The translations under genes were made by a program, and so were the position numbers. A DNA stretch of 64,000 nt from Zootoca vivipara (lineage: Eukaryota): NCBI RefSeq assembly GCF_963506605.1, contig NC_083292.1:15500001-15564000 (forward strand), read 5' to 3'. The stretch's first letter is position 1. Each line of letters starts with the position of its first letter. Below the pieces are notes generated by a model. That model ran no database searches, had not been told where the DNA came from, and saw nothing but the letters and a program-made list of their open reading frames with translations. Below, piece after piece: positions 10,101 through 62,778 of this stretch.

Positions 10101-13100
10101 GGGCCGCAGTTTGGGGGTGCCTGCTCTAACCATGGAGTGATGGGCCCTCCCCCTTTAAAAAATAATTACCCAATGTAGAGTAATTTACCAGCAGTCCAGT
10201 ATTGCGCTTCTATTAAAGAACCTAAACAATAAGCAGCTAAAAAAAGAAGATTTGGAAAAAAATATTTAACTGGCCCACTAGAGGAGGAAACATCAGCCCT
10301 GATAAGGCCACTGGGAGGAATGACAAAGATACAACAGGAAGGATATGTTTAAATGAATTACATTCTGTAACAGCAGCTTTGCCATTCCAAGCTGGCCAGA
10401 CAAGCTGCTTACATGATCAACAAGGGTGGTGCAGTGGGGAAAGGCAGACTAGCCAGCCAGTCTGGAAATAAAAACAAAAAAGTGGGTAGCAAACAGTTTT
10501 AACAGACATAAAAGTCACTCTTTTAATCCTGTTTATAGTGTGACTGAGTAGAAATCCCATATGAATCACCTGTGTGGAGGACAACTGTTCTGCATGGACA
10601 CTTTGGACAACATGATTTCCCTGTAACAAAGCAGCAGCAAAATCACAATGGTGCACCACTGACACTATCCATGCATTTGGGTCAATTCACATGTTAACTT
10701 TTCTGCTACTGCATGGCAAGTCTTGCAATTGCCCCAAAGTGAAATCCACATGCCAGCTGGCTTCTTCATCTCACAGACCACAAGGCCATTGTCAGGATCG
10801 AAGATAAAAAGTCTTCTTCTTTAGAGATCACTTGTAGCCAAGTAAGATTGTCTTCCATAAACACGGTTTTAACAATGAGTCCGTAAGTGACTGTGGAGGC
10901 CAATTCTGGAGCCACATGTCCTTCCACAGTGGGGACATTGGTTTCCAGGCCGGAGTTGATCATGGTGTGGATTTGCCAAGCGTGCCTTCCTCTTAGCACG
11001 TTTCTCCCTTGCGTCCTGAGATCGAGTGTCTTCAAAGCGCCATGACACCTTTGGTAAAGGCTGTTCTCCAACTGTAGCGCTCGCAGGCCAGTGTTTCCCA
11101 GTTGTCGGTGTTTATACTACATTTTTTTAAGATTTGCCTTCAGACAGCCCTTAAACCTCTTTTGTTGGCCACCAGCATTACGCTTTCCATTTTTAAGTTC
11201 AGAATAGAGTAGTTGCTTTGGAAGACGGTCATCAGGCATCCACACAACATGACCAGTCCAACGAAGTTGATGTTGATTGTTAACTTGTAGCCAAGGAACC
11301 CCAAGCTTTTTCTCAAAAAGGAGAACCCAGTAGATCAGGCATGTCCAAAGTCCAAATCCGGCCAGCCGGTTGGTTTAATCTGGCCCCTGTGACAGTTTAT
11401 TTTCTGGGGTAAAATCCTAAAAAAAACCAACAATCCTAAAAAAAGGTCAACAACTTTGGTTGGTCCTTTGGTCGGCCCTTCACTTCATCCAGTATCATCT
11501 TAAGCTTATCTCACGCCCTGGTGCAGGGATCCCTAGGGCGCCCCCAGCCCCCTGGAGGTCCCTCCCACACGCGCGCCTGCCGCCTCACCTGCACTTTCCT
11601 CAGCTGTGCATGTTTGGGTAGCGCAGGAGGCTGCGGCCCACCCCCTGGCTGCCTTGGCCAGGGAAGAGCAGCACCGAAGCCTCCTGGGGAGCATGGTGTG
11701 CCTTCCCGCTAGGTCCCAACCACGGTGCCTCGTTCTCCGCCGTGTCCCGCAACAGGCTCACCGCCTCCCCCTCGCTGGGAGGCCTCAAAACTCCACCTCA
11801 GCTGAGCCATCACCGTGCGGAGAGCCGCAGGGCCAGGAAGGGGAGAGCGCAGCCTCCGGAGAGGCTTCGGCACCAGCGCACACACAGCACGGGGGAAAGG
11901 AGAAGGAGGCACGGCGTGGCGTCCTGGCCAAACAGCCGGAACCCCACGCTCACTTGCGAGGCTCCGGGGTGCTGCCTCCTCCTCTGCTGCCTAACGACAG
12001 CCCGCTGATTCCTGCAGCCAAGGGAGAGGTGGAGGCGGTGGTGGAGGAGCCAAAGGGATTAGTGGCTGGTTGCGCCCCGTCAGCGCCCCCGAGAGGCCGG
12101 CGCCCTGGCGCAACGCGCCACTAGGCCCTATGGTAAAGACGCCTCTGACTTCATCAAATCTGGCCCTCTTTGAAAAAAGTTTGGACATCACTGCTGTAGA
12201 TGCTACCAAAATCATGAAGAAATGGGATTAAAATGCACGTGTCCATTTAATCCTGGTAGTAACAAGTCAAAGATACTATTAGTCCAGTTATGGAATGCTG
12301 AGATAGCTATGTTTCTTCCCACACAGACATTCTCAGACTCTATCACAGCATGTACTCTGAAAAAAACCAACAAGATCCCCAGAGAGACTAGAAAGATCTA
12401 TACAAGCCAGAAAATCTGCTCACTTGCTTATGTCAATCTGCAAAATGAGGTTTGAAAGACACTGCTAGAGTATCCCTGACATTGGACAGAATAAATCTGG
12501 GCAAAGAAATGCAGATATTTTGGGGGCTGAAGACCACAGTGTGAACTGGAAAGACAAGTAGAAAATTTGCTGAAGTAGAACTATTGAATACAGGTCTTGC
12601 TAATCCTACAGTTAGAGACTTTATCATAGTACAGATACATATGACTGCTGAAAATATGGTTTTGCAGCTAGGAGCTAGTGTCACATCTAGATCACCAACT
12701 TTGCATCACCCGGGTTCTGCTGAACAGCAAGAAGAGTATGTACACTTTCTGCAAAGCTACTGCCTTGTTGATTTAGTGCAGCTTTCTTCGATCTGGTAGC
12801 CTCCAGCAGTTTTGAACTACAACTCCCATCAGCCTCAGGCAGTACAGTAATGCTCCCATGAGCTCTAGCATACAGTCATGCTGCTTGAGAGTTGTAGGCC
12901 AAAGCAGCTGAAGGGTGGCAAAGTTTGATTTAGTGGGAAAGAGTTCTTAATTTGACCAGGAAATCTGTAAGGCACTAAAACCAACAAAGGAAAGACACTG
13001 CGTTGATGGTCTACACAACACATTAAGTCCCCAATGATGTCTGCAGTGTCTGTGGAGGGGCTTCTCCAAGATTTACATGGTATCTTGCTGCTGTCAGGTA

Positions 13101-16100
13101 TCCCTCCCCAGGCTTGTCTCCTCTCCTGCAGAAGCAGCTCTTGATTGATAAGCTGAGTAGGCCTCTCACAAAGAGAGGTTAGGGATGCAGGAAGCATGCA
13201 AATGCTCAGGATGACCACCCTTCCTCCCATCAGTGTTCTGCTGTAATCACAATACAGTCGTACCTTGGAAGTCGAACGGAATCCGTTATGGAAGTCCATT
13301 CAACTTCCAAAATGTTCGGAAACCAAAGTGCGGCTTCTGATTGGCTGCAGGAAGCTCCTGCAGCCAATCGGAAGCTGCAAAAGCCTCGTCGGATGTTCAG
13401 CTTCCAAAAGAACGTTCGAAAACTGGGTTTCAATCGTTCGGGAGCTGGTTTGTTCGGGAACCAAGGCGTTCAAGATCCAAGGTATGACTGTACCATGTTA
13501 AGGTTTCTGCCTGGCTCCCCTTTCCCCTGGAAATTTTGTCTGGGGTGCCTAGACAAAGAAAGAAGCCATGGACACAGAGAAACAGAGGCAGGGAACAGAG
13601 CAACAGTTTGCACATCAAACCCATTCCTAAGAGCGCCCCCAAGGCAACCATGCCATGATGGAGCAGTAAACAAAAGGGAGCCGTTTTGATCAGTGCTGGT
13701 CCCCAATCCAGAAGGTAAAGGGACTTATCCATTCAAAGTGCCCTAACAACATGACAGCAAAACACTTCACTATCAGTGGGAAAGGGACTGGCTTTCATTT
13801 CTTGTAAAGCAATCGGCATTTGTTGCTGCGACACAATGACAGAAAACCAAGAAATATGCAAGGCCTCAATTTTGCTTCAAAAATATCAAAGAATCTTGTA
13901 GCACCTGAAAGGCTCATGAAGGCTATCAATGGCTATGTTCTGTTTCTAGTATCAGAAGCAGTATGCCTCCATATATGGCGGCTGGGAATAAACACTTGGG
14001 AGATTGCTATTGTACCCAGGTCCTGCATGGGAGCCTGCCATGGGCATCTGGTTCACCACTGTGAGAATGGGATTCTGTACTAGACAGGCCCTACTCTGAC
14101 CCAGCATCAAGGATCGTTTAATGTTCTTATTACCATAACAGATGTGACAGAAGCTTTCACAGGGTTCTACTCCACCAGAGAGAGTATATGTACAAATGTG
14201 ACAGGTAAGAAGTTAAGAGGTCCAGTAGGTGGACTATGTATTCTGCAAAACGAGATTAAAAACTGAAGGAGCACATAGAACACACCTTGGATTTCACTTT
14301 AACAGTGACATCAAATGCTACAGGAAGTGACATACAGAAAATAAATGCAGAGTGACAGCAAGTAGCTTCAATTTGTAGCATGAATGAAAAGCTGGAGGTC
14401 TTTAAGACAATTAAATTCCAAGCAAAACCTTCTCCAAATTCCAATGTAAACATTCTACGGAAACCTCCAGCAAATAAACAGTAAACCCCAACAAAAGAAA
14501 AGAGCTGCTCATTTTCCAGAGACGGAGAGACTAAATGATGGAACAGGAAACGTTAATTTGCTGCCTGTTGCTTCTGTGGAAAATAGCCATGCTTTTACAA
14601 ACACAGAGTCAGTTGATGGCTTTCCTTCCTATTCAGCTAGCACCCCCCCCCCTCTCACACACACAGAGGTGAGGCTAATAAACAGTCCCAGCTCTAGTCA
14701 CCAAGGCTCACTGCCTTCACCACAATACAAAGAGCTGCATGATTCACAAATCCCAGAAGTGAGAGGGTGAGATTTCCAGTCAAGATAATATCAGATTAGC
14801 CACACGCAATTGGATAGTTAAGCAAGAATAATTTATACCCAGCTCTAACAGAGAGAGGGATGGAAAACTTCATGTCTGACATCATCCAGAGGTCTTACAA
14901 GAAAGAGCACTAGATTTTCTCAAGGGTAGGCTTTGATATGAAGAAATATATCATCGGGAAAAGACCAAAGGCCGATCAAGCACCTAAGTGGTTCATTCAG
15001 ATGAGCATGTCCTCCAGACAGGGATGGTAGCCTGCTTTCAGTCACTCCTCTCTGTTTACTTCTTACTGCAGTCTTCCCCAAGCTGCTGCCCTCCACAAGT
15101 TTTGGACTACAACTGCCATCAGCCACAGCCAGCATTACTACATTGGGCTTCTCACCACCTTTCTGTGTGGCCCTATTTTGCCTTTTACGAGTTGTGGATC
15201 AATGTACATGAAGCCAAGATATCCTGTAGGGATGGGGAACTTGCAACCCTCCAGATGTTATTCCTATCACCACTGGCCATTGGCCATTCTAGGTTGGGTC
15301 AATGGGGGTTGGAGTCCAACATCTGGAAGGCCACCTGTTCCTGACCCTATGCTTGAAGGAATCATGGCCATCTTGCCTTTACAAAGGTATATATTCCAAC
15401 AGCCCACCTGGATTTGGCCTTTGCCCATGATTCGGTCGGTGGTCTCTCCATCTTCTTTGGTAAGCTTGCTTTTGTTGTAACACTTCTCGTAGCACAAGAT
15501 TCGCAGTGTCTGTGAACCCTCCAGTTCTATCTCAAATTCCTGCAGGAGGAGAACAGCACTTCAGTCAATCGAGATTCACTCTTCATAGCAAGGATAGCTA
15601 GATGCTTAGCCCCCAGCCAGCATGGTCAATGGCCAGAGATGATAAATTGTGCAGTCCAACAACATCTGGCAGGCACCACACTGGCTGCCCATGCTGTAGC
15701 TCTCAAAGTCCTAACATCACAGAGATTTCTTGGGAAATTATGAAAGGGCACCCTGAAGATTTTGCCTCATTCTGTTTCCCACCTGGGGAATTAGAACTAA
15801 CAAGTTTTGTGCAATCAAAACAGTTTTCTGTCTGCATCCTATATAATAAAGTCCCTGTGTCTCTGCGTCCAGTCCCTGTGTCCGTGCTACCGCGCATGTG
15901 CCCCACGGACACAGGGATTGGACGCAGAGACTTGGAGCGCAGAGACTGGCCCCTCCTCTGCCTCCTCCCGTTGTCCCGAGTAGCGACGGCCTCCTCCACC
16001 TCCCTTCTCCTGAGGAGAAGGAAGAGGCCTCTGCCGCCTCCTCCCGCAGCACACCTCAGGTAAGCGCGCCGCCCCTCGCTCTCCTGCCTCGTAGCTCCGC

Positions 16101-19100
16101 GTCACTCCCCCGCAGCAGGGAGGTGGTGGAGGCCGCCGCCACTCGGGACAGCGGGAGGAGGTGGAGGAGGGGCCAGTGGGCCTCAGGCGAGAGCGGGAGC
16201 TGCAGCAGAGTGACGCGGGAGCGGCAAGGCAGGAGAGCGAGGGGTGGCGCGCTTACCTGAGGCACGCTGCGGGAGGTGGCGGCAGAGGCCTCTTCCTTCT
16301 CCTCAGGTGAGGAGGAGAAGGTAGGTGGAGGAGGCCGTCGCCACTCGGGACAGCAGGAAGAGGCGGAGGAGGGGCCGGTGGGCCTCAGGCGCTCAACGGA
16401 GGGGACGCCTGCACGGTCCCAGGGCTTCCCCTCCGTTCCCGCCCGGCTAGCGCCCGTTTACTGAACGGGCTGAATGACACTAGTAATATATAAATCTATA
16501 AGATTGTTACCCAAAGAGGGGGTTGTGCACTTTGCTGGCAATGGGAGGTGGGCTAAACTAAACTTATGGAACCTCCCCCTAACATAACAAAGGCAGCAAT
16601 AAATAATGCAATATGGAACAATCAAAGGTATTAAAAACTTAACAATACAATTAAAGCATGGACATAAAAAACCTTTAAGAGGACTAGAAGACCATAATAC
16701 ATATGTGAAGGATGACTGTCACACCCTTTGTCATTTCCAGAGGGAGACAAATTCTTGGCTTTGCCGGGAAAGATACTGCAACTTCCATATTTCCTGAGGA
16801 AATATCTTTTGTAAACTACTTAGATGTTCTCTACAGAGTAAGTGGCATGTACACTTTGTTAAACAAAATAAAAATATTGATGAGCTAAACTATTGTAATA
16901 GGTCTCTAAATAAGAACAATGAAACCCTCTAGTGCAGCCTTCTCCACCTTGGCATCTTCCAAATGTTTTGGAGTGCAATTCCCAACATCTCCAGACAGAA
17001 CATGGGGCTGATGAGAATTATAGTCCATAATATCTACAGGGAACCAGGATGCAGAAGGCTGTACTAGAATAAAAAACAGCAATAGAGGCAGCTCCTCGTG
17101 CAAGCTGTGCAAAAGAGAGACTGTTCTGCTTCTGGCTACTTTTCCCTTCAGTTTCATAAGTCATTCAAAACAAATTCAATGAAGCTGCATGATTCACTAT
17201 TACTCAAAAGCAGCCCCCAGGAATACATCCCAAGACTAACCACTCTAAGCAAGCCACAGCATTGGCCTTGAACTTTCCCCACTCGGTTAATGCTGCAAGT
17301 CAGTTGTGGTGGTCAGTTGTTGTTGTATTTATACCCTGCTTTTTCCTCTAATGGGACTCTTTCCACATACAAGATGCAACTGTGGCATTCACATCTAAGA
17401 CTCGCTATGCTCTCCTGCTGAATTTTCAAAGAGGTGGATTTAGATCAAAACAGTTTGATGCTTATAGAGGGGGGAATCCAAAAGGATAATTCCTTCCCCC
17501 CCCCCGCACCTTACTGAAACAAATGGGAGGGGGCCACAAGGGCACTGCCACACTTGACCCCCAAATTAGACAGCTGAATTTCACTATGACCACTTTTCAA
17601 ATGGGATTAATTCTTGGAACCATTTGTACACAGACAGCAGCAGTAAGATGAAGGTCCCATCCTATTAGGAGCAGGTCATGAAAAAAGAATCTCCTATACT
17701 GCAGAAACGTACAGGAACCTCCCTGATGCACCACATAAGGAGAAGGCATTTTAAATCTGTACAAATAGAACTACTGGCCTCCTCTTGTCAAAGACTCCGA
17801 CTATGAGAGGTGGTGATCAGAGGAAGCCCAGAGCACCACCACAGCCTACCTCATTCCAGTTGGGCTCTGCTGTGTCTCTGTAGACTCTCGTTTTTGCCTT
17901 GTTGACGAAGTACCCAAAAGAATCCACTTCTAAAGTGCAGTAGAGGTCTAGGAGGAGGATGACAAAAGAAGCAATGGCTCGGTTAGGGTCACCAGCATCT
18001 CTTGCCGTTTCCTTGGTCAGCTGGTGCTCACACTCAACCTGACTGCTGGTTGGTCCATGCAACAACAGTGATCTACACTTTGGAGCACCTCCCAGAGTAG
18101 GGCGCTTCCTTCAGTCCCATGGTGGTCTCTGCTGACACCTGATATTTGGAGCACGAGGGCTGCTCTTCTCTCCTCAAGTGTCTCCGTCGTTTCCAGAACC
18201 ACTCCAAGGCAAAGATTATATTGCAAGCTCATTCTTATTCCTGACAATTATCCCACAAGGTTGATTTGTAAAAACCCAACCTCAAATGATGGGGGAATTT
18301 ATTAAATTTCATTCTGTCACAGAAGACCTTTCTGACATGCCAGGCGTCAGTCACCAAGCTGTCACCGCTGTGCATTTTAAAAGGCTTCCAGGATAGACTC
18401 CCCACACAGAAACACACCCCTTGGCAGGCAGCGGCACAGGCTGAATTGGCCAGATGGGAGGCCAGCTGGCCACCCATCCCTTGAGCCCTCCAAAGCTCAA
18501 CTCTCCTGACTGCCACAAAAATGCCAACTAGGTGTGCTGTGACAACCACCTTCATATGTGTGCCAGCTATATAGCTGCAGAGAGAAAGTGCATTGATTGG
18601 GCTGTACAAGAAGCCATTTCACCACTGCACTGCGTCTGTGGAAGCAGAACAACAAAGGAGTACAGGAAGCAGCTGCCTTAAACCAAGGCAGAGCATTTGG
18701 ACTATCTAGCTCAGTACTGTTTACACTGACTGGCTGCAACTCTTCAGGGTCTCCAATCCACTTCCATAGAAGAAGAAGAAGAGTTTGGATTTGATATCCC
18801 GCTTTATCACTACCCGAAGGAGTCTCAAAGCAGCTAACAATCTCCTTTCCCTTCCTCCCCCACAACAAACACTCTGTGAGGTGAATGGGGCTGAGAGACT
18901 TCAGAGAAGTGTGACTAGCCAAAGGTCACCCAGCAGCTGCATGTAGAGGAGCGGAGACGCGAACCCGGTTCCCCAGATTAGGAGTCTACCGCTCTTAACC
19001 ACTACACCACACTGGCTCTCGTTATAGTCCATTGTTATGACAGCAGCACCAGCATTTCCCTGTGGGCAACAAGAGGCCTGCTTGAATCCAGAGTGGGGCT

Positions 19101-44700: not shown

Positions 44701-47700
44701 AGAATGTTGATGAATCTTTGGCCTTACCTAGCTAGAGGGCTCTTCTGATATCCTTATGTTTTTCCCACTAGTTGTGGCCAACAAAGACTTGCTCCTCCTG
44801 CCTGGTCGCTGTTTCTTGGAGTGGCTGGCAGTGCAAGCCAGGCCCAGTCTCCCATTCCCCAAGCAGACAACTGGTGTGCAGACACATGGTAGTACTTGGA
44901 TGACCGTACTGAGTTGCGCTCACCATTTCTACGCACCGCAGAATTTCTCCTCCGGTCTGAAGAACTAGAGGCACCTCGAGAACGCGACATTTCCTTTCTT
45001 TAAAAGAGAACAAACTGGAAGAGCGGGGCCCAAGTGCTTTCCCCCACAGCCAGAGAAGAGGTGTGACAGCAACAACTAAGCAGGCAGCCCTGGGGCTTAC
45101 TGGCTGGGGAAAGAGCTCTTCCACGGTGCTGCCCCAAGAGGTACGGTATTTGGGCCAAGGTCAGGGTACAAGGAACGCTCAGGATATCCAAGGGGAGAAT
45201 ATGTCTACCCCCACAGTCTGCGGCTGAGGAGGCAGAACAGCAAGGCTAGATCAAAGCCGGAAGGAGGAGTGCGGATGGAGAGAGAAAGAGAGCTGGGGGA
45301 GGGGGAGGGAAGCAGGGGGAGGGGTGGGGGGAAGAACTGGCAGCTCCCAGGGAAAGGAGAGACAGACAGTGCCCTTGCTTCCCTTTGCAAACATCTGAAC
45401 CTCGTTTCTCCCTCTCCTCTCACTTCAAAAGGGGGCTTGGCAACTCCCCGAGGCAGGACTGCAAAGGCTTTGGGTCCAACAGGATCAAAAACAAAAGCTG
45501 GTCCTGGGGAGGGAGGGAAGTGGGGAGGGTTCCCTGCTGTGTGCCTCTCCCTCCGTCAATTGACCACAACCCAAATCATGTGCAGGCAATATGGGAAAGG
45601 AAAAAGAAAGTCCAGCTGCTGGGCGATGGTGCAGGGCAGCTCACTTTGCCCACGGCACAAGGACGGACGGACACAATGCTCGTATCTGAACGCTGAGCGT
45701 TTGCTCCCAACTCCAGTCAACAAAATGGCAGAGCTACAACAGGGCCAATGGGGGAAACCATTTCACCTTTGTCCCATGCGGATACAGCAGGAAAAATGGA
45801 TTCCTGTGGGTTTCTCATGGGCTATTATAAAACTCAAGAAGGGACCCGATAGTGAGAAAGGTTGTGGAAGCACAAAGACGCTCTAGAACAGCGTTTCTCA
45901 ACCACTGTTCCGCGGCACACTAGTGTGCCGCGAGACGCTGGCTGGTGTGCCGCGATGTGTGGCGACGAGAAGGGCGATTTGCATTGTCACGTGCCTGGCG
46001 GCCGCCAATAGACAGCGTTGACCAGCCAGAAAGCAATATTTCTCCTCCTCTTTCCCAAAGCTCAGTGCAAACGAGCCTGGCGGCCGCCAATACACAACAC
46101 TGACCCGCCGGAAAGCAATATTTGGCAAGTGTTTCTTACAGTCATAATTATAATATAGGGCGGCACAGAGTTAAATTTTTTAACTTTTTTAATGGTGGTG
46201 TGCCTCATGATTTTTTTCACGGAACAAGTGTGCCGTGGCCCAAAAAAGGTTGAGAAACACTGCTCTAGAAGCAATAGTTTAAAGAAATAAGGAGCAAGAT
46301 TTGTGATTTCTAGAGTATAAGAGTTAATATATAAATGTATAGATTTAAAATAAGAATCGGGTTGATAACAGTTATAAGAAGTTTGGTATTAGAAAATGTG
46401 AAGAATGTTGAAAACGTGAGCGCTGAAATGGTTACTAGTAGAAAAGTGGATGGGGGGAAGGAGGAAGTCACTGATACAAGAATTATAATAGTAAATGATA
46501 TATGGAATTTTTGTTCTTTTTTATTCTATGCTATTTGTTTTTGTTGTATTTTTCTTTTTTCTTGTGTGTTTTTCTATTTCTATTTTGTATTTCTTCTTGA
46601 AAAACTAATAAAAATTACTTTTTTTAAAAAAGGGAAACCGATAGTGAGAAGTACATGGGCTCCTAATTCCCATGAGCCTCAGCGTCATACAACTGTGTTG
46701 GCTGGGGCTGATGAGAACAGGAAGTTGCCATACAGAATGAGACCACTGATCCATCTGGCATGGTGTGGTCTCCACACTGACTGGCATGGGCTCTCTAGGC
46801 TTTTAGGCAATGAGTCTTTCCCCAGCTTCACCAGGAGATGGTATTCAACATTGAACCTGGGACCTTCTATGTGCCAAGCAGATGCTCTTGTCACTGAGCT
46901 GCAGTCCTCCCCCTTTGGAGTTCAGTTTACTTGAAGGTCACCAGGCTAAGGAAAGCTGCTTTTTATCTCTGGCCTAAACACTTAACTCTTCGGTTGAAAA
47001 ATGAACCGGAAAGCTCAACCGGTGTGCAAACCCACGCACACAAACATGCTCCAGACCAGGGGTCTGCAACCTTTAAGACAAAAAGAGCCACTTGGACCCG
47101 TTTCCAAAGAAAACAAACAAACTGGGAGCCGCAAAACCATTGCGACATTAAAAACAAATATAACACTGCATATATTGTTTCTTACCTTAATGCTATATAA
47201 TTCAGTGGGACTTACTTCTGAGAAACATGGTTAGGATCATTATCTACTGGCTTTTAGACTTCTCAAATGTTCAAATGTAGTTACTGGCCAAAAAAACACC
47301 TCTGTTTAAAAATGCCTATTTAAAAAAGCGAAAATATCTTTAGAAACATGTCTTTTTAAAAGAATATACATTTCAAAATGTGTGTTTTTGGGGTTCTTGT
47401 TTAAATAGGTGGCAGATTAATAGAATGGACTTGTGCAGAATTAGAATAGACCAGAAATAGATGGAGTTGTCCAACCATACAAAAAAGCCACCAGCCCCCC
47501 CCCGGGGGGGGGCTATATGCCAAGGAGGGACGAAGGCGGTGAGGGGCAGTGGCGCGGCTCCGTCTCCTCACCGCTTCCCCGGGCGTCTGTCAGTGGCAGC
47601 GGCAGCAGCAGCAGGGGCCGGGGAACGGGAGCCTCCTCAGCGCTAGAGTGGCAGCAACAGCAACCGCAGGGGGCGGGCATGGCTAAAGCTCCCTCTGACT

Positions 47701-48595
47701 GTACCTTGGAGAGACTGAGTGGCTGGCAAAGGAAGGAAAGGGAGGGAGGGAGGGAAGGAAGGAAGGAAGGAAGGGAGGGAGGGAGGGAGGAAGGAAGGAA
47801 GGAAAGGATGGAGGGCGCCCGGGACGTGTGTGTGTGTGTCCCTCCTTTTCCTCCACACACACCCCGCCACCGCCCGCTCAGCTCTTCTCCTCCTTCCTCC
47901 CCTTCGGTTACATTTTTCCACAAGTAGCTGCTCGCCTCGCAAAAGCCCTTTCCAAGAAAGAAGACGTGGTGGAAATGTGAGACTGGAGGCGCGCGCGCTG
48001 CTGGCCCCCTCGGGAAAGCCAGCCGGAAAGCCGGAGTCATGTGCTGCCCTGCGCCTCTTTAAAATGCCGTTGACAGTGCGCGGCAGTGGAGGTCGCCCGG
48101 CAAAAGTGCGTGCCTCGCGATCGAGAAAAGCCGGAGCGCGCCCGGCGGACAAGGGGCGGAGCCTTGTTGGCCCAGGCCAGTTGGCCTCGTTAGCAGGGCC
48201 GGTGCTAGGGTTTTTTGCGCCCTAGGCGAGATCACCATCTGACCCCCCCCCCCCGAGGTGGTGGACTCTCCTTCCGGGAAGGCTTTGAAACAATGGTTGG
48301 ATGACCATTTGGATACGTTAGTTGAGATTCCTGCATTGCAGGGGGTGGACTAGATGATCCCTGGGTGCCTTCCAATTCCACCCCATTCCATGATTCTATG
48401 ATGCCTCTCTTAGAGGGTGGGGTAAAGCCTGACCAGCCTCCCTCTTCGGCCTCCCCTCCTTACACCCCTATTGGCCGATCACTCCATGCCTATCAAGCAA
48501 TTCCCCACATGGCATTGGCCCACTTTGTACAGACTAGGGATGGGAGGGAGGGGAAGAAACAGAGAAGGGGGCAAGGCTCCCCCCTCTCCCTCACA

Positions 48596-48634
<39 letters not shown>

Positions 48635-51600
48635 ACTCACTCACTCACTCACACACACCCACACACACCTTCTCTTTCCTCAGCTAAGTTCTTCCTGTCC
48701 CAGCGGCGACGCACCCAGGAGACTCCGCTGAGGAACCAGGCACCCAAGGCTTGCTGGCTTGCCCAGCCGTCTCCGGCCCTGGCGCTTGGCAGCACGCCCT
48801 GGCAGGCAGGGCTGCCACTCCGTGCCCGCTGGCTCAGGCATAGGCTCTGTGCCCGGAGGGCTGCTGGGCGGGGCTCCTCGCTCGGCCGGTGCTTCCTTTT
48901 TAATTTTTTCTTTTCCCGGCATTGTCGGGCGAGGGGCGGGCCAGCGAGGAGGGGCGTCACGCCAGTCAGCCACTAGCGTGGCGCCTCGCTAACCCGCCCC
49001 TCGCCCGGCAACGGCGGGAGGAGAAAAAATAAAAGAGGAAGCTGCAGCCGGCATGGAGGCGAGGGGCGGGCCAGTTAGGAGGGAGGGGCGTCAGCGTCAG
49101 CCAGCCAATAACGCGCCGCCATGCTAGCCTAGCCTGCCCCTCACCTCCTCCCAGGTCCCGCCCCCCAGCCCGGCAGCTTCAGGAAAAAAAAGAGGAATCC
49201 ACAGGCGCGCCGGGGGAAAAAACCAAAAGAAAGGCGCACAGGGGCGCCGTGGGAGGGCGGCAAGCGACGGTGGCGTTAGTATCCGCCCCGGAGCCGCGGC
49301 AAAGGTGTAAAAGAGCCGCATGCGGCTCCGGAGCCGCGGGTTGCCGACCCCCGCTCCAGACCATGATGAAGGTCACAAAGGCATCTGCCAGGAGCTGCTG
49401 GAGTCCTGACAAAGAAGCCAAGTCCAGCCAGAGGGCTAGGCAACCCCTAACTTGCCAGCCTGCAGGCCTTCCGTCCCACACAGCTGCTTCTCACTCATAG
49501 TTGCTCCTATTTGCCACCTTAGACACCACCTTCCCCCATTGTGCGCAAACCACAACACAGCTGAAGGGGAAAGCAGAGAGGCAACACCTGGGAGAGAGAA
49601 GGGGCTCCACGGGTCACAAGAGCATCAGCAAAGCAGCTATGAGAGAAGCCCAGGGCTTTGGCTCACCAGCTTCTGGAAGAGGTCCCCCACCCTCTGTTGG
49701 TGGCTCCACTGCTGCACCCGCGGGAAGAGCCCGTCATAGAAGTCCTTGTGGATCTCGTAGAGCTCAGGCACTTTGAAGAAGATGGTTTCGATCTGCTGGC
49801 TGGTCAGCACAGGCTGTGAGGTGGTGGCAGCAGCTTTCAGAGGCTTCATGGGCTGGAAAACAGAGACCCCCCCTTCATGCAGGTGAAAAAACAAAGGCAC
49901 CCACCAGGGCTTCCTGTCTGATCACGCCAGAATATCCCCATTTGGACATGCTACAAATCAGCCTTGCTCAACCTGGTCTCCTCCAAATATTTTGGACTAC
50001 AACACAGCCATGCTGGCTGGAGGTGAGGGGGTGTTAAAATCCAAAACATCTCCAGGTTGAGGAAGGCTGTTCCAGATCTTTGTGAAAAAGCCCAATCCTA
50101 TCCCGTTCTCCCATGAAGCGTAAGACACGGTGGCCACCTCAGGAACCCTCTGCTCACAACCACCAAGCAGAGTCTACTGGGGAATTGTCCAGCTGAAGTC
50201 CCATTTAAATGAATAGGAACAGTTTACAAAAGCCCGACAATGCTCTTGCACAGCTTCCATTACTTCTAATGAAGGGTGGGCTGAACTGGAGAGCTTCCCA
50301 GTCAGTTAGGATGAGGGAAATCCCTTTTGGCTACTCCACCGCAAGTTCACAGTGTCTTCAGCCAGTTCTGGAACTAAAACCCACGCTTCCCCATCCACGT
50401 TCCTGTGTGTTCTTACCAGCAACAGAGCTTCAAGGTGACCTAAGTAGGTTTCTTCACTAGCCAGGATTCCAGACAGGACCCATTTCCTCATCTCCAAGCC
50501 CTTCTCCAAGTCTGGCTCACTCTAGAGAAAGGAAAGACACAATAAAAACAATGGTAAGGCAGTGCAGAAGGCAGCTCCCTAAGCTGGATGTGGAATTGGG
50601 GATTAAAGGAGAATTTTGTTAAGTCTGCATTTTAAGTGAAATGACTCAATTCCCACCTCCAATACCAAGGCGCATACCAGAACACGTACTTATCCCTTTG
50701 CATTTCACACTTCCCGGTTCAAATGACATATTAAAATGCATGCAGTGTTCAGAAATGCACACAGAGAGGTGAAATACATTGTGACAAAATATGCATTTAG
50801 CTACAAATTTTCATACTTTTAAATGCAGAAAATAGCAGGGACTTATGAATGAGCCTGAGCGAAATTAACTCGGAATGAAAATAGGCAGAACCATCCAACC
50901 CTAGCTGTGATGCTTCAAAGACTCATAAATCTCATTCTGACAGGGGTGCTGCAGGGAAACTTGCCTGCACTAAAACGGTGGCACGCAGGCCAAAAAAAAA
51001 AAGATCCGTTTGCTAGGCAGGGAGCACCTAGCATACCCCCCCAAAACAGAAGATACATAAAGTGTGAAGGGGAGGTGGTGAAAGGAAGCAGGCTTAGTTT
51101 CACACCTTGATTTTGAGTTAGCAGACTCCGGCACTGCTTACCTGGAGTACAGTTGTAAGACAGACAGACCCACCATCCCTCAGATGTTGTGTAAAATCAG
51201 AAATTGGGGTGGGAAAGAAGAATGAAATATGAATCAGCAGCATAAAAGGCTTAGCCATTCTACAGCTCTTTGATGCTTGTTGCCCATTTGCAAGGAATAG
51301 TGCCATGTCCCCACTAGGCACTGTTGCTGTGCAAAAACCACTCAAGTCCTCCAGCTGACAGGCACATCCTAGGATCTCTAAAGCAGGCCCCAAACACCTC
51401 GGAGGCCTGGGTGCTCTTTGTACCAGCACACTCAACCCTTGGGGTTCAAGGAGCAATTTATTCTCGGGTTCAAGGATCGATTTGTTATCAGTTTTGTACA
51501 AAGAAGGTCATCAGCTCAACATCAACAGCATAGTCCATACAGTACAGGAAGTTGCTTGGTTCTTTCGCGTGCTTAGAGTGAAGTCACAGGTGCAAATCCA

Positions 51601-61600: not shown

Positions 61601-61693
61601 AGCAGGGGGGCTCACCACAGCCTTCTGGTTGCTTTGAACAGTCTTGCAAAGGACTTTTTGCTGCTCTAAACATCTCAATTCTGAGCTTTTGCT

Positions 61694-61870
61694 CAGGGCA
61701 GTCTCAAACAGGTCGGGCGCCCTGGCGCTGAGGGGCGGAGATCGCTCCGGCGTTGCCGCCCTCACAGGTTGCAGCATGGTTTCCGCGCGGCTTTGCCGTG
61801 CAGCGCCCGGCCTGCCGGCCCGGCGCCCTGGCACACCGCGCTACCGGGAGTCTACCTAGAGCCGGCCCTG
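61694..61870. mobile_element. Non-autonomous GC-rich hAT
   Basis: Perfect 8-bp TSD CTTTTGCT; CAGGGC...GCCCTG ends; GGCGCCCTGGC subterminal motifs. Confidence 0.85.
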
Positions 61871-62778
61871 CTTTTGCTGTTGCCCCTACTGCCACCATTT
61901 TTTCTTTCTCACTGAAATGCTTTGCACTTTTCCTTAACTCCATCTTCAACAATTCTGCACTGTAGGACCCTACATAGCATTTGTCTGAGCTGATTAAAAG
62001 CAGCTTTCCTGAAAAGCAAAGGGGCAGTTTAGGCTTCGCACACCTTTGACTTTATGAAAGATCACAAATTCTAACCCCATACCATCACCTTCCCCCCAAA
62101 GTCCCTACTACTGTCATCTCAACAAATCTTCGCCAGACATGTAGCATCACTCAGCAGTCTCACAAAAGCATTATCTCTTCGCCCAGGCTTTCCCTGACCC
62201 ACAAGACCGGGCCCTGCCATTACAAAACCCTGGTATTGTTGTTGTTTTTTAGAATACTACTTTACTGGATTTTACTTTACTGTTTTTATTACACTGATCT
62301 ATTGTTTACATGTCATGTTTTTTGCATACCGCTTAGAGGGCTTTAAATAGTAAGTAGTTTAGAAATGTTTTCAAATGGGTCAGTGTGCCAGCTTTCAAAT
62401 TCCTCAGAATTCTCCATCAGGCTAATTATTAAAAAAAATAAAAACCAAAGGGGAAGGGAGGAGAGACAGAAGAAAAAACCTGTTGATGTTAGTCCAGCCA
62501 TCTTAAACACGTATCTGACATAGACCTGGATAAACAGCCTGGCTTTCACCACCCCCTGCATAGTTTTTATTATGCAACCTGAGGGAGAGCCGTGGGGAAC
62601 ACTATTTTATGATGTTTTGGCATTGCCCTCATCTGGACTTTGGCATGCTCCAACCTGGTTATTGCAAGTTACATGAGTAACAAGACAGGGTTCCAACTAC
62701 CTGAGGAGTGAAAAGTCTAGAAGAATTGCAAGAAGATGACCTCAGAAGTGGGGCTGAAGTCTGACCCTGCACCACTGC

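What the first reader, a model, noticed from the sequence alone, without database searches (positions are those of the whole stretch)
11490..12147. Pack-hAT: DNA transposon carrying a captured piece of the MCAT first exon
Seen: a 658-bp GC-rich insert bounded by a perfect 8-bp TSD (ACTTCATC), CAG...CTG ends and short arms of about 65-80 bp with CGCCCTGG motifs. The interior reads on the minus strand as the MCAT N-terminus: an Arg-rich transit-peptide-like stretch, then [25 protein letters not shown]. It has a frameshift, a 2-codon deletion and a premature stop, with no poly(A) and no downstream MCAT exons. Knowledge: 8-bp TSDs and CAG termini typify hAT elements. Gene capture by TIR elements is well known in plants (Pack-MULE, Pack-CACTA) and much more rarely described in vertebrates. 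Inference: a lizard hAT family captures GC-rich 5-prime gene ends at the DNA level and disperses them, here in sense orientation within BCR intron 16.
Basis: partly seen in the sequence, partly recalled or inferred. Interest (0 to 1): 0.9.

Follow-up and report, generated by a model that had tools for sequence, protein, structure and literature searches.

The report
Lizard hAT transposon carrying MCAT exon piece
A 658-bp jumping-gene copy in an intron of the lizard BCR gene carries a dead piece of the first exon of the fatty-acid gene MCAT, and read depth suggests tens of further copies in this species, which is rare for gene capture by DNA transposons in vertebrates.

Summary
A 658-bp GC-rich block (11490-12147) is flanked by an exact 8-bp repeat, ACTTCATC. 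Hundreds of reads and contigs from other copies of the host repeat run straight into 12148 without the block, so it is a true insertion.

- **Arms:** both are homologous, counted from the termini, to a 177-bp MITE elsewhere in the window (61694-61870). That MITE has its own 8-bp duplication and a terminal repeat like Anolis hAT-N6/7/8. In raw reads the arms reach roughly 300-1000 copies.
- **Cargo:** the minus strand matches human MCAT residues 29-87 (E 9e-9). It has a 2-codon deletion, a stop and a likely frameshift. A related species holds a single-copy contig with the two codons intact, probably the true MCAT gene.
the cargo itself has a depth equal to about 30-200 copies in this species. 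It is single-copy or absent in three relatives. This points to an amplified, lineage-specific Pack-hAT subfamily.

Not shown: the parental MCAT locus and its breakpoints, capture at the DNA rather than RNA level, an autonomous hAT partner, any expression, and the claim that the family habitually captures 5' gene ends. That last claim rests only on unchecked notes from this scan on other DNA of the same genome.

Verdict: a new member of a known kind (animal Pack-TIR), notable for its amplification.

The parts
11482..11489 (.). Left copy of the 8-bp target-site duplication, ACTTCATC
   Evidence: Read directly. Other copies of the host repeat carry this octamer once (joints to 12148 and the loose-end consensus).
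11490..11555 (+). Left arm (transposon terminus). It starts CAGTATCATCTT and has CGCCCTGG at 11514.
   Evidence: Depth is 270 in bin 11490-11549 against about 0.56 on the unique flank, then drops to about 40 in the next bin. It is 31/60 identical, ungapped from the terminus, to the left end of the MITE at 61694 (3 of 2000 shuffles reach this score).
11556..12049 (-). Cargo of about 494 bp that is not shared with the cargo-free relative. It is MCAT-derived at least over 11608-11865. The origin of 11556-11605 and 11866-12049 is unresolved: further MCAT exon 1, 5' UTR or promoter, or subfamily backbone.
   Evidence: Depth is 26-110, about 30-200 copy equivalents, lower than the arms. It has no counterpart in the 177-bp MITE. 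GC is 0.67 and CpG observed/expected 0.58.
11600..11788 (-). 62-codon ORF remnant matching MCAT residues about 27-87 ([19 protein letters not shown]^[12 protein letters not shown], then a stop). Two codons are missing after GSQ.
   Evidence: phmmer against PDB: human MCAT 8csp, E 9e-9. tblastn with mammalian MCATs. A single-copy contig of organism D aligns to 11608-11742 with 18 mismatches and has 6 extra bases behind 11644.
11791..11865 (-). Upstream cargo segment, probably also matched by the relative's presumed true MCAT contig. It covers N-terminal coding sequence or 5' UTR and includes a possible ATG at 11810-11808.
   Evidence: Inferred. The bin depths equal the depth of that contig (41.9), and the distance-to-end values at 11831 and 11835 place the end of the aligned piece at 11865. 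The piece itself was not listed.
12050..12147 (+). Right arm (transposon terminus). It ends ...AAGACGCCTCTG, contains GGCGCCCTGGCGC at 12099 and an internal hairpin (12050-12076 / 12107-12133).
   Evidence: Depth is 546 in bin 12090-12149. It is 41/61 identical to the right end of the MITE at 61811-61870 (0 of 2000 shuffles reach this score), and the homology runs back to about 12050. The hairpin is (I1).
12148..12155 (.). Right copy of the target-site duplication, ACTTCATC
   Evidence: All paralogous joints land on 12148.
11336..12193 (.). Host element, an older hAT-like MITE that received the insertion. Its own sequence is 11336-11489 plus 12148-12193. Terminal repeats are CAGGCATGTCCAAAG / CAGTGATGTCCAAAC and the flanking repeat is CAGTAGAT / CTGTAGAT (7 of 8).
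   Evidence: I2. Depth is in the hundreds. The terminal repeat resembles Anolis hAT-N5_AC, CAGGSRTGTCCAACCT (PMC3014272). Contigs of organisms C and D begin to align exactly at 12194 (records 16 and 23).
61694..61870 (+). Cargo-free relative of the arms: a 177-bp MITE with GC 0.73, ends CAGGGC...GCCCTG and an 8-bp duplication CTTTTGCT (61686-61693 / 61871-61878).
   Evidence: Its right terminal repeat, CAGGGCCGGCTC, matches 10 of 12 bases of the Anolis hAT-N6/7/8_AC repeat CAGAGSCGGYCC.

Best explanation
The block 11490-12147 is one copy of a non-autonomous hAT-type DNA transposon. Its backbone is a short GC-rich MITE of about 180 bp.

**Proposed history:**
1. An ancestor copy acquired about 0.3-0.5 kb from the 5' part of the MCAT gene in its centre. 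The piece covers coding exon 1 from the transit-peptide region to about residue 87, possibly with upstream sequence.
2. The most likely mechanism is template switching during repair or replication of the element (inferred).
3. The chimera kept both termini, so a transposase supplied in trans could still move it.
4. It amplified to tens or perhaps more than a hundred copies in this species' lineage. This happened after the split from three relatives that differ by about 5%.
5. This copy landed inside an older hAT MITE in a BCR intron, in the same orientation as BCR, and duplicated the target ACTTCATC.

The MCAT piece is a pseudogene fragment with a 6-bp deletion, a stop and frame changes. It cannot make an enzyme. 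If the copy has any effect, it would be regulatory, as CpG-rich DNA with a GT donor-like site in sense within the intron. That is untested.
For: **Shown:**
- Exact 8-bp duplication, with paralogous empty sites in 4 species.
- Both arms are homologous, in register from the termini, to a separate MITE that has its own 8-bp duplication. That MITE's terminal repeat resembles Anolis hAT-N6/7/8_AC, which were assigned to hAT on 8-bp duplications and YARNG ends (PMC3014272).
- Arm depth is 270 and 546 against about 0.56 on the unique flank.
- The cargo is MCAT: E 9e-9 to human MCAT residues 29-87, including the conserved LLFPGQGSQ loop.
- In organism D a contig at single-copy depth aligns at about 87% and carries the two codons missing here.
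- Cargo depth is 26-110 in this species. At many sites the majority of reads differ from the window copy and agree with the relative's gene: 11641, 11660, 11694, 11699, 11710, 11714.
- In organism D the cargo region shows exactly single-copy depth. In organisms B and C it shows none, while the arms are multi-copy in organisms B and D and only the right arm in organism C, whose left-arm bin is nearly empty at 0.85.
- BCR is on the minus strand.

**Inferred:**
- That the multi-copy cargo reads come from elements with the same arms.
- The capture mechanism.
- Mobilisation by a hAT transposase.
Against: - The terminal inverted repeat of this copy is weak (10 of 16). Its left end, CAGTA, misses the G of the YARNG motif.
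- Neither duplication fits the loose nTnnnnAn preference of hAT targets.
- No autonomous partner or transposase was seen.
- No second cargo-bearing copy could be read base by base, so different duplications around the same chimera are not demonstrated.
- The copy-number estimate rests on about 0.6x of reads at 80% identity in GC-rich DNA. Part of the depth near 11910-12047 may come from low-complexity CCTCC/GGAGG matches.
- The window copy differs by about 3-5% or more from every other read over 11694-11714. It is therefore not a very recent insertion, or it belongs to a minor sub-lineage.
- The parental MCAT locus of this species was not retrieved.
Confidence: 0.8

Rival explanations
1. The element and its dispersal are real, but it belongs to another cut-and-paste superfamily that can make 8-bp duplications, such as P or Mutator-like, and not to hAT.
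For: The terminal repeat is weak and the left end is CAGTA. The duplications do not fit nTnnnnAn. The most similar published families (Anolis hAT-N6/7/8) are themselves orphans with no known autonomous partner.
Against: Two related elements both have exactly 8-bp duplications and CAG...CTG ends. The only lizard DNA-transposon survey I read reports 8-bp duplications only for hAT families and found no amplified P or MULE families (PMC3014272). MULEs usually make 9-10 bp duplications and have long terminal repeats.
Confidence: 0.08
2. This is a single or few-copy Pack-hAT. The high depth over the cargo comes from unrelated GC-rich sequences that cross-match at 80% identity, so the MCAT chimera was never amplified.
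For: Reads were accepted at 80% identity and many lay only partly on the stretch (15563 of 23249). Parts of the cargo are low-complexity. No homologous ORFs from other copies were found in the protein collections.
Against: In the non-repetitive coding part (11610-11730) 37-57 reads cover each bin. They share consistent variant letters, start at about 35-43 distinct places, and some carry as few as 0-6 other differences. The same stretch draws only one contig in organism D and none in organisms B and C, so generic GC-rich cross-matching is not the cause.
Confidence: 0.07
3. Transposition-independent gap filling, the main route proposed for animal Pack-TIRs. In this view an MCAT fragment was pasted by break repair into a MITE that already sat at this BCR locus, and the chimera never moved.
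For: Tan et al. 2021 conclude that most of their 370 animal Pack-TIRs arose this way and are single-copy (PMC8277862).
Against: The multi-copy cargo depth argues against it. The 8-bp duplication brackets the whole chimera inside a host repeat whose other copies are uninterrupted at that exact point, so the arms arrived together with the cargo or before it at this site. Relatives lack even the host MITE here.
Confidence: 0.03
4. The direction is reversed or there was no capture. Either the lizard MCAT exon 1 derives from this transposon family, or the block is a segmental copy of the MCAT locus that includes the arms.
For: None beyond the shared sequence.
Against: The shared part includes the LLFPGQGSQ active-site loop, conserved from bacterial FabD to human MCAT (hits 2c2n and 2h1y). 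The arms are 3-10 times more abundant than the cargo. At least the right arm is abundant in all three relatives, although the left-arm bin is nearly empty in organism C (0.85), and all three lack the cargo family. A cargo-free MITE with the same arms is in this window.
Confidence: 0.02

Closest known systems
Animal Pack-TIRs, especially multicopy Pack-hAT such as Pack-hAT-N8_XT carrying a CAPSL 5' UTR piece in Xenopus tropicalis (Tan et al. 2021, PMC8277862)
   Same: A non-autonomous hAT with both termini intact, a few hundred bp of a host gene's 5' end in the middle, an 8-bp duplication, and more than one copy.
   Different: That study found only 4 multicopy cases among 370, and its worked example has three loci. 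Here read depth suggests tens to more than a hundred copies. The lizard genome in that survey scored zero because only 77 TIR elements, none of them hAT, were annotated. Lizards were therefore effectively unsurveyed.
Rice Pack-MULEs (e.g. Zhao et al. 2018, PMC5861414)
   Same: Capture of GC-rich gene fragments between transposon termini, followed by amplification. The insertion raises local GC sharply, here from 0.44 to 0.67.
   Different: A different superfamily (Mutator, 9-10 bp duplications, long terminal repeats) and a different kingdom. Expression and translation are documented there. Nothing of that kind is tested here.
Anolis carolinensis hAT-N6/N7/N8_AC orphan MITE families (Novick et al. 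2010, PMC3014272)
   Same: Short (288-810 bp), abundant (about 1000 or more copies each) non-autonomous elements with 8-bp duplications, the terminal repeat CAGAGSCGGYCC and no known autonomous partner. The window's 177-bp MITE ends CAGGGCCGGCTC, and the element's right end is CAGAGGCGTCTT.
   Different: Only 8-10 of 12 terminal bases agree. I could not compare internal sequences, and the species is not known to me. No gene cargo was reported for those families. That paper reports incorporation of foreign DNA only for hobo_AC and Helitrons.

Membership tests
hAT superfamily (non-autonomous member) | 8-bp target-site duplication | tested here: met
   ACTTCATC on both sides, with a single copy in paralogous host-repeat copies. 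The related MITE has CTTTTGCT on both sides.
hAT superfamily (non-autonomous member) | Short terminal inverted repeats with the terminal motif YARNG | tested here: inconclusive
   The right end, CAGAG, fits. The left end, CAGTA, fails at base 5. The terminal repeat is 10 of 16. The related MITE has CAGGG at both ends. The family consensus could not be built.
hAT superfamily (non-autonomous member) | Termini shared with an autonomous element encoding a hAT transposase | not testable with these tools
   There is no transposase ORF in the window and no access to the rest of the genome. The nearest published terminal repeats (hAT-N6/7/8_AC) are orphans as well.
hAT superfamily (non-autonomous member) | Target preference nTnnnnAn across many insertions | tested here: inconclusive
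   Only two duplications are available. ACTTCATC fits neither position and CTTTTGCT fits one. The preference is statistical.
Pack-TIR / Pack-hAT (transposon with captured host gene fragment) | Recognisable TE termini on both sides of the internal sequence | tested here: met
   Both arms are multi-copy and homologous to an independent MITE.
Pack-TIR / Pack-hAT (transposon with captured host gene fragment) | Internal sequence of host-gene origin with an identifiable parental copy elsewhere | tested here: inconclusive
   Gene origin is shown at the protein level and by a single-copy contig in a related species. The parental locus in this genome was not retrieved, so the breakpoints are not defined.
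Pack-TIR / Pack-hAT (transposon with captured host gene fragment) | For the multicopy, transposition-dependent class: the same chimera at several loci with different duplications | tested here: inconclusive
   Cargo depth equals about 30-200 copies, but no second locus could be read.

The most novel reading that the evidence does not exclude
This GC-rich hAT MITE lineage may be a vertebrate counterpart of rice Pack-MULEs. Under this reading it repeatedly picks up CpG-island 5' gene ends (promoter, 5' UTR and first coding exon) and amplifies individual chimeras to tens or hundreds of copies. That would scatter promoter-like, first-exon-like modules with donor sites through introns and intergenic DNA of one lizard lineage within a few million years.
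Probability: 0.3. Interest if true: 0.8.

Novelty: new member of a known kind. Interest (0 to 1): 0.6.

Why it matters
Gene-fragment capture by cut-and-paste transposons is a major source of exon shuffling in grasses. In animals it has been judged rare, mostly single-copy and mostly independent of transposition (PMC8277862).

A chimera that still moved, and that reached tens of copies in a lizard lineage while being absent from relatives about 5% diverged, would be a clear vertebrate case of the transposition-dependent route. Its youth would allow three things to be recovered: the capture breakpoints, the donor element and the active transposase.

If the many similar, still unchecked notes on this genome hold up, lizards would offer an animal system for asking why 5' CpG-rich gene ends are favoured. 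They would also allow a test of whether such cargo seeds new promoters or first exons. For BCR itself, this copy is most likely neutral intronic DNA.

Tried and rejected
- **Pfam on the two short cargo ORFs:** no hit, because they are too short.
- **Other copies in the window:** none for the cargo or for close arms by blastn. nhmmer with arm profiles found only the element and the 61.7-kb MITE.
- **Fetching the true lizard MCAT locus failed.** The representative search with the 62-aa ORF gave only mammalian exon-1 isoforms. The homologue search with one of these listed 120 mammals only.
- **Searches with the 62-aa ORF and the 172-aa antisense ORF:** these were meant to catch ORFs called on other copies and found nothing. 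Given the length limits and what that collection holds, this says little.
- **Scan-findings look-ups:** blank by arm sequence and by the word MCAT.
- **Rfam on 10800-12400:** nothing.
- **Retrocopy:** rejected. There is no poly(A), only part of one exon, TE arms and an 8-bp duplication.
- **Possible further MCAT homology at 11555-11605:[10 protein letters not shown] against AARRVLGYDL. This is weak and left open, because the same stretch also loosely resembles the MITE interior.
- **Precise empty site in relatives:** not obtained. Their contigs stop aligning at 12194, the outer edge of the host MITE. The left flank (10950-11300) is a very high-copy repeat, so the other side could not be placed.
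- **Spliced BCR model:** none was built. BCR exons were located only by short peptide motifs that I recalled from memory.
Full report
**What is there**

The window carries a 658-bp block, 11490-12147. Its GC is 0.67 and its CpG observed/expected is 0.61, in surroundings of GC 0.44 and CpG observed/expected 0.22-0.24. The octamer ACTTCATC stands directly before it (11482-11489) and directly after it (12148-12155). The block starts CAGTATCATCTT and ends AAGACGCCTCTG.

An exact 8-bp flanking repeat near a GC-rich block is not rare by itself. Searching 400 x 400 boundary pairs around 16 GC-rich blocks of this window gave 1-14 such repeats per block. Repeats that also have YAR...YTR ends occurred only three times: this element, a poly-A artefact and a second small element at 61694-61870.

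**Proof that it is an insertion**

The block lies inside an older repeat, 11336-12193. That repeat has terminal inverted repeats CAGGCATGTCCAAAG / CAGTGATGTCCAAAC and a 7-of-8 flanking repeat CAGTAGAT / CTGTAGAT. Its terminal repeat resembles Anolis hAT-N5_AC (PMC3014272).

I laid raw reads of the same species (X20) and contigs of three related species (X5, X6, X7) on 10950-12749 at 80% identity. This showed many other copies of the host repeat that pass from 11460-11479 straight to 12148:
- 11467->12148 in 126 reads and 21 contigs
- 11479->12148 in 63 reads and 13 contigs

In 704 reads the letters before 12148 have the consensus ...GGTCGGCCCTCACGCACCTTC. Uninterrupted copies therefore hold the octamer once, and every joint lands on the first base after the block. 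These are paralogous empty sites, and they confirm the target-site duplication.

The window's host copy also lacks about 9 bases (CACGCACCT) just left of the insertion and has a small tandem duplication. That is why the left side of the joints scatters.

**The arms are transposon termini**

On unique flank (12210-12749) the X20 reads give a mean depth of about 0.56, from 1.52 Gb read. Depth along the block is as follows:

| Segment | Depth (X20) |
|---|---|
| Left arm bin, 11490-11549 | 270 |
| Right arm bin, 12090-12149 | 546 |
| Bins between the arms | 26-110 |

The window holds a 177-bp element at 61694-61870 with GC 0.73. Its ends are CAGGGC...GCCCTG and it has a perfect 8-bp duplication, CTTTTGCT. 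Counted from the termini, its left 60 bases are 31/60 identical to the left arm (3 of 2000 shuffles score as high). Its right 60 bases are 41/61 identical to the right arm (0 of 2000). The CGCCCTGG / GGCGCCCTGGC motif sits at the same offsets in both. Right-side homology runs back to about 12050.

The block is thus a MITE of this kind with about 494 bp of extra DNA in its middle. The MITE's terminal repeat, CAGGGCCGGCTC, and the element's right end, CAGAGGCGTCTT, resemble the CAGAGSCGGYCC of Anolis hAT-N6/N7/N8_AC. Those are abundant orphan families that Novick et al. assigned to hAT on 8-bp duplications and YARNG ends.

In this copy the terminal inverted repeat is poor (10 of 16), and the left end, CAGTA, misses the G of YARNG. 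No transposase was seen. hAT is therefore the best-supported superfamily but is not proven.

**The cargo**

- On the minus strand, 11600-11788 reads ...[12 protein letters not shown]...[25 protein letters not shown] followed by a stop. It aligns to human MCAT residues 29-87 with E 9e-9 against all PDB sequences. It also aligns to mammalian MCAT exon-1 products.
- The match includes the LLFPGQGSQ loop shared with bacterial FabD. The direction is therefore gene to transposon.
- Two codons are missing after GSQ.
- Mammalian exon 1 continues for about 40 more codons, so the cargo stops inside exon 1.
- A weak in-frame resemblance ([10 protein letters not shown] against AARRVLGYDL) could extend the cargo to 11555.
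- Upstream, other frames hold Arg-rich text with weak similarity to the MCAT transit peptide: [20 protein letters not shown] against AWARGCVAGCRRGASDLPLPPP, E 0.02 in a 1-kb database.
- No other MCAT exon is in the window.

In organism D, a 1866-bp contig at single-copy depth (41.9, against 39.7 on unique flank) aligns to 11608-11742 with 18 mismatches. It has CACGAA inserted behind 11644, which restores the two codons as Phe-Val. By bin arithmetic it also appears to cover about 11791-11865. I take this contig for the true MCAT exon 1 of that species.

Over the non-repetitive coding part, 37-57 X20 reads cover each 60-bp bin and about 64-106 reads cover single sites. That is about 30-200 copy equivalents.

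At 11641, 11660, 11694, 11699, 11710 and 11714 most or all reads differ from the window copy and agree with organism D's gene. This implies a subfamily consensus closer to the parent gene than this copy is. The window copy carries private changes, two of which (11694, 11699) are C-to-T at CpG sites.

| Relative | MCAT part (11610-11849) | Arms |
|---|---|---|
| Organism D | Depth equals one contig | Multi-copy |
| Organism B | No depth at all | Multi-copy |
| Organism C | No depth at all | Right arm multi-copy; left-arm bin nearly empty (0.85) |

Flank divergence to these relatives is about 4-5% (records 7, 16, 23). Their contigs begin to align exactly at 12194, the outer edge of the host MITE. 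This suggests that even the host insertion is specific to this lineage.

The simplest reading has three steps. There was one capture in this lineage. The chimera then amplified by transposition. This copy is a somewhat decayed member. That the multi-copy reads sit between the same arms is an inference, because no second locus could be read.

**Context**

Short BCR peptide motifs that I recalled from memory match exactly on the minus strand. They run from 50.4 kb (DH domain) down to 1.07 kb (RhoGAP). RILCYEK is at 15.5 kb and DWQRTV at 7.1 kb. The element is therefore in a BCR intron, with the MCAT reading in the same sense as BCR.

A donor-like CAG|GTGAGG lies at 11590/11589 on the minus strand, after the stop codon.

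**Comparison with what is known**

Tan et al. 2021 (PMC8277862) found 370 Pack-TIRs in 100 animal genomes, 208 of them hAT. They argued that most arise without transposition. Only four were multicopy. Their example is a hAT-N8_XT with a 291-bp CAPSL 5' UTR piece at three frog loci. Their lizard genome scored zero with only 77 annotated TIR elements, none of them hAT, so lizards were not really tested.

[quoted passage not shown] The only hits for 'Pack-hAT' in the searchable library were the Tan et al. paper and a plant survey.

This element is therefore a new member of a known kind, unusual for its apparent amplification.

**Earlier notes of this scan**

First-stage readers noted many similar hAT elements with CpG-rich or first-exon cargo on other DNA of this genome. 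The genes named include UNC13B, ALOX5, DNAH10, DISP1, AP4E1 and a site near PRDM16. None has been followed up, and I could not check them. They are leads for the family-wide claim and not support for it.

**Limits**

- The parental MCAT locus, the capture breakpoints, DNA-level against RNA-level capture, the autonomous partner, polymorphism and expression are all open.
- The copy numbers are rough. They rest on about 0.6x of reads at an 80% identity threshold in GC-rich DNA.

Noticed in passing
window 15836-16483: A second GC-rich island (GC 0.65, CpG observed/expected 0.70) looks like a Helitron on the + strand. It starts A|TCCTATATAATAAAG and ends with the hairpin CCCGTTtactGAACGGG followed by ...CACTAG|T. 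Its interior is a long imperfect palindrome of CCTCC/GGAGG-rich DNA with donor-like CAG|GTAAGC and CAG|GTGAGG sites. It lies in the BCR intron upstream of the RILCYEK exon.
   Followed up: partly
window 11336-12193 (own sequence 11336-11489 and 12148-12193): The host of the finding is itself a high-copy hAT-like MITE, with a terminal repeat like Anolis hAT-N5_AC and the duplication CAGTAGAT / CTGTAGAT. Contigs of two related species start aligning exactly at 12194, so this insertion seems absent at their orthologous site. The window copy lacks about 9 bases (CACGCACCT) next to the nested insertion and has a 12-bp tandem duplication at 11454-11477.
   Followed up: partly
window 10950-11300: A very high-copy repeat, with depth about 5000-6500 in 0.6x reads, which corresponds to thousands of copies. 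It is shared with all three relatives. No Rfam match for 10800-12400. It was not classified.
   Followed up: no
window 61694-61870: A 177-bp GC-rich MITE (GC 0.73) with the 8-bp duplication CTTTTGCT and a terminal repeat, CAGGGCCGGCTC, like Anolis hAT-N6/7/8_AC. It is the cargo-free relative of the finding's arms.
   Followed up: yes
window 47432-48319 and 48626-49753: Two further GC-rich islands (GC 0.62-0.63, CpG observed/expected 0.60-0.66) in an upstream BCR intron. No 8-bp flanking repeat with YAR termini was found around them, so they do not look like the same kind of element.
   Followed up: partly
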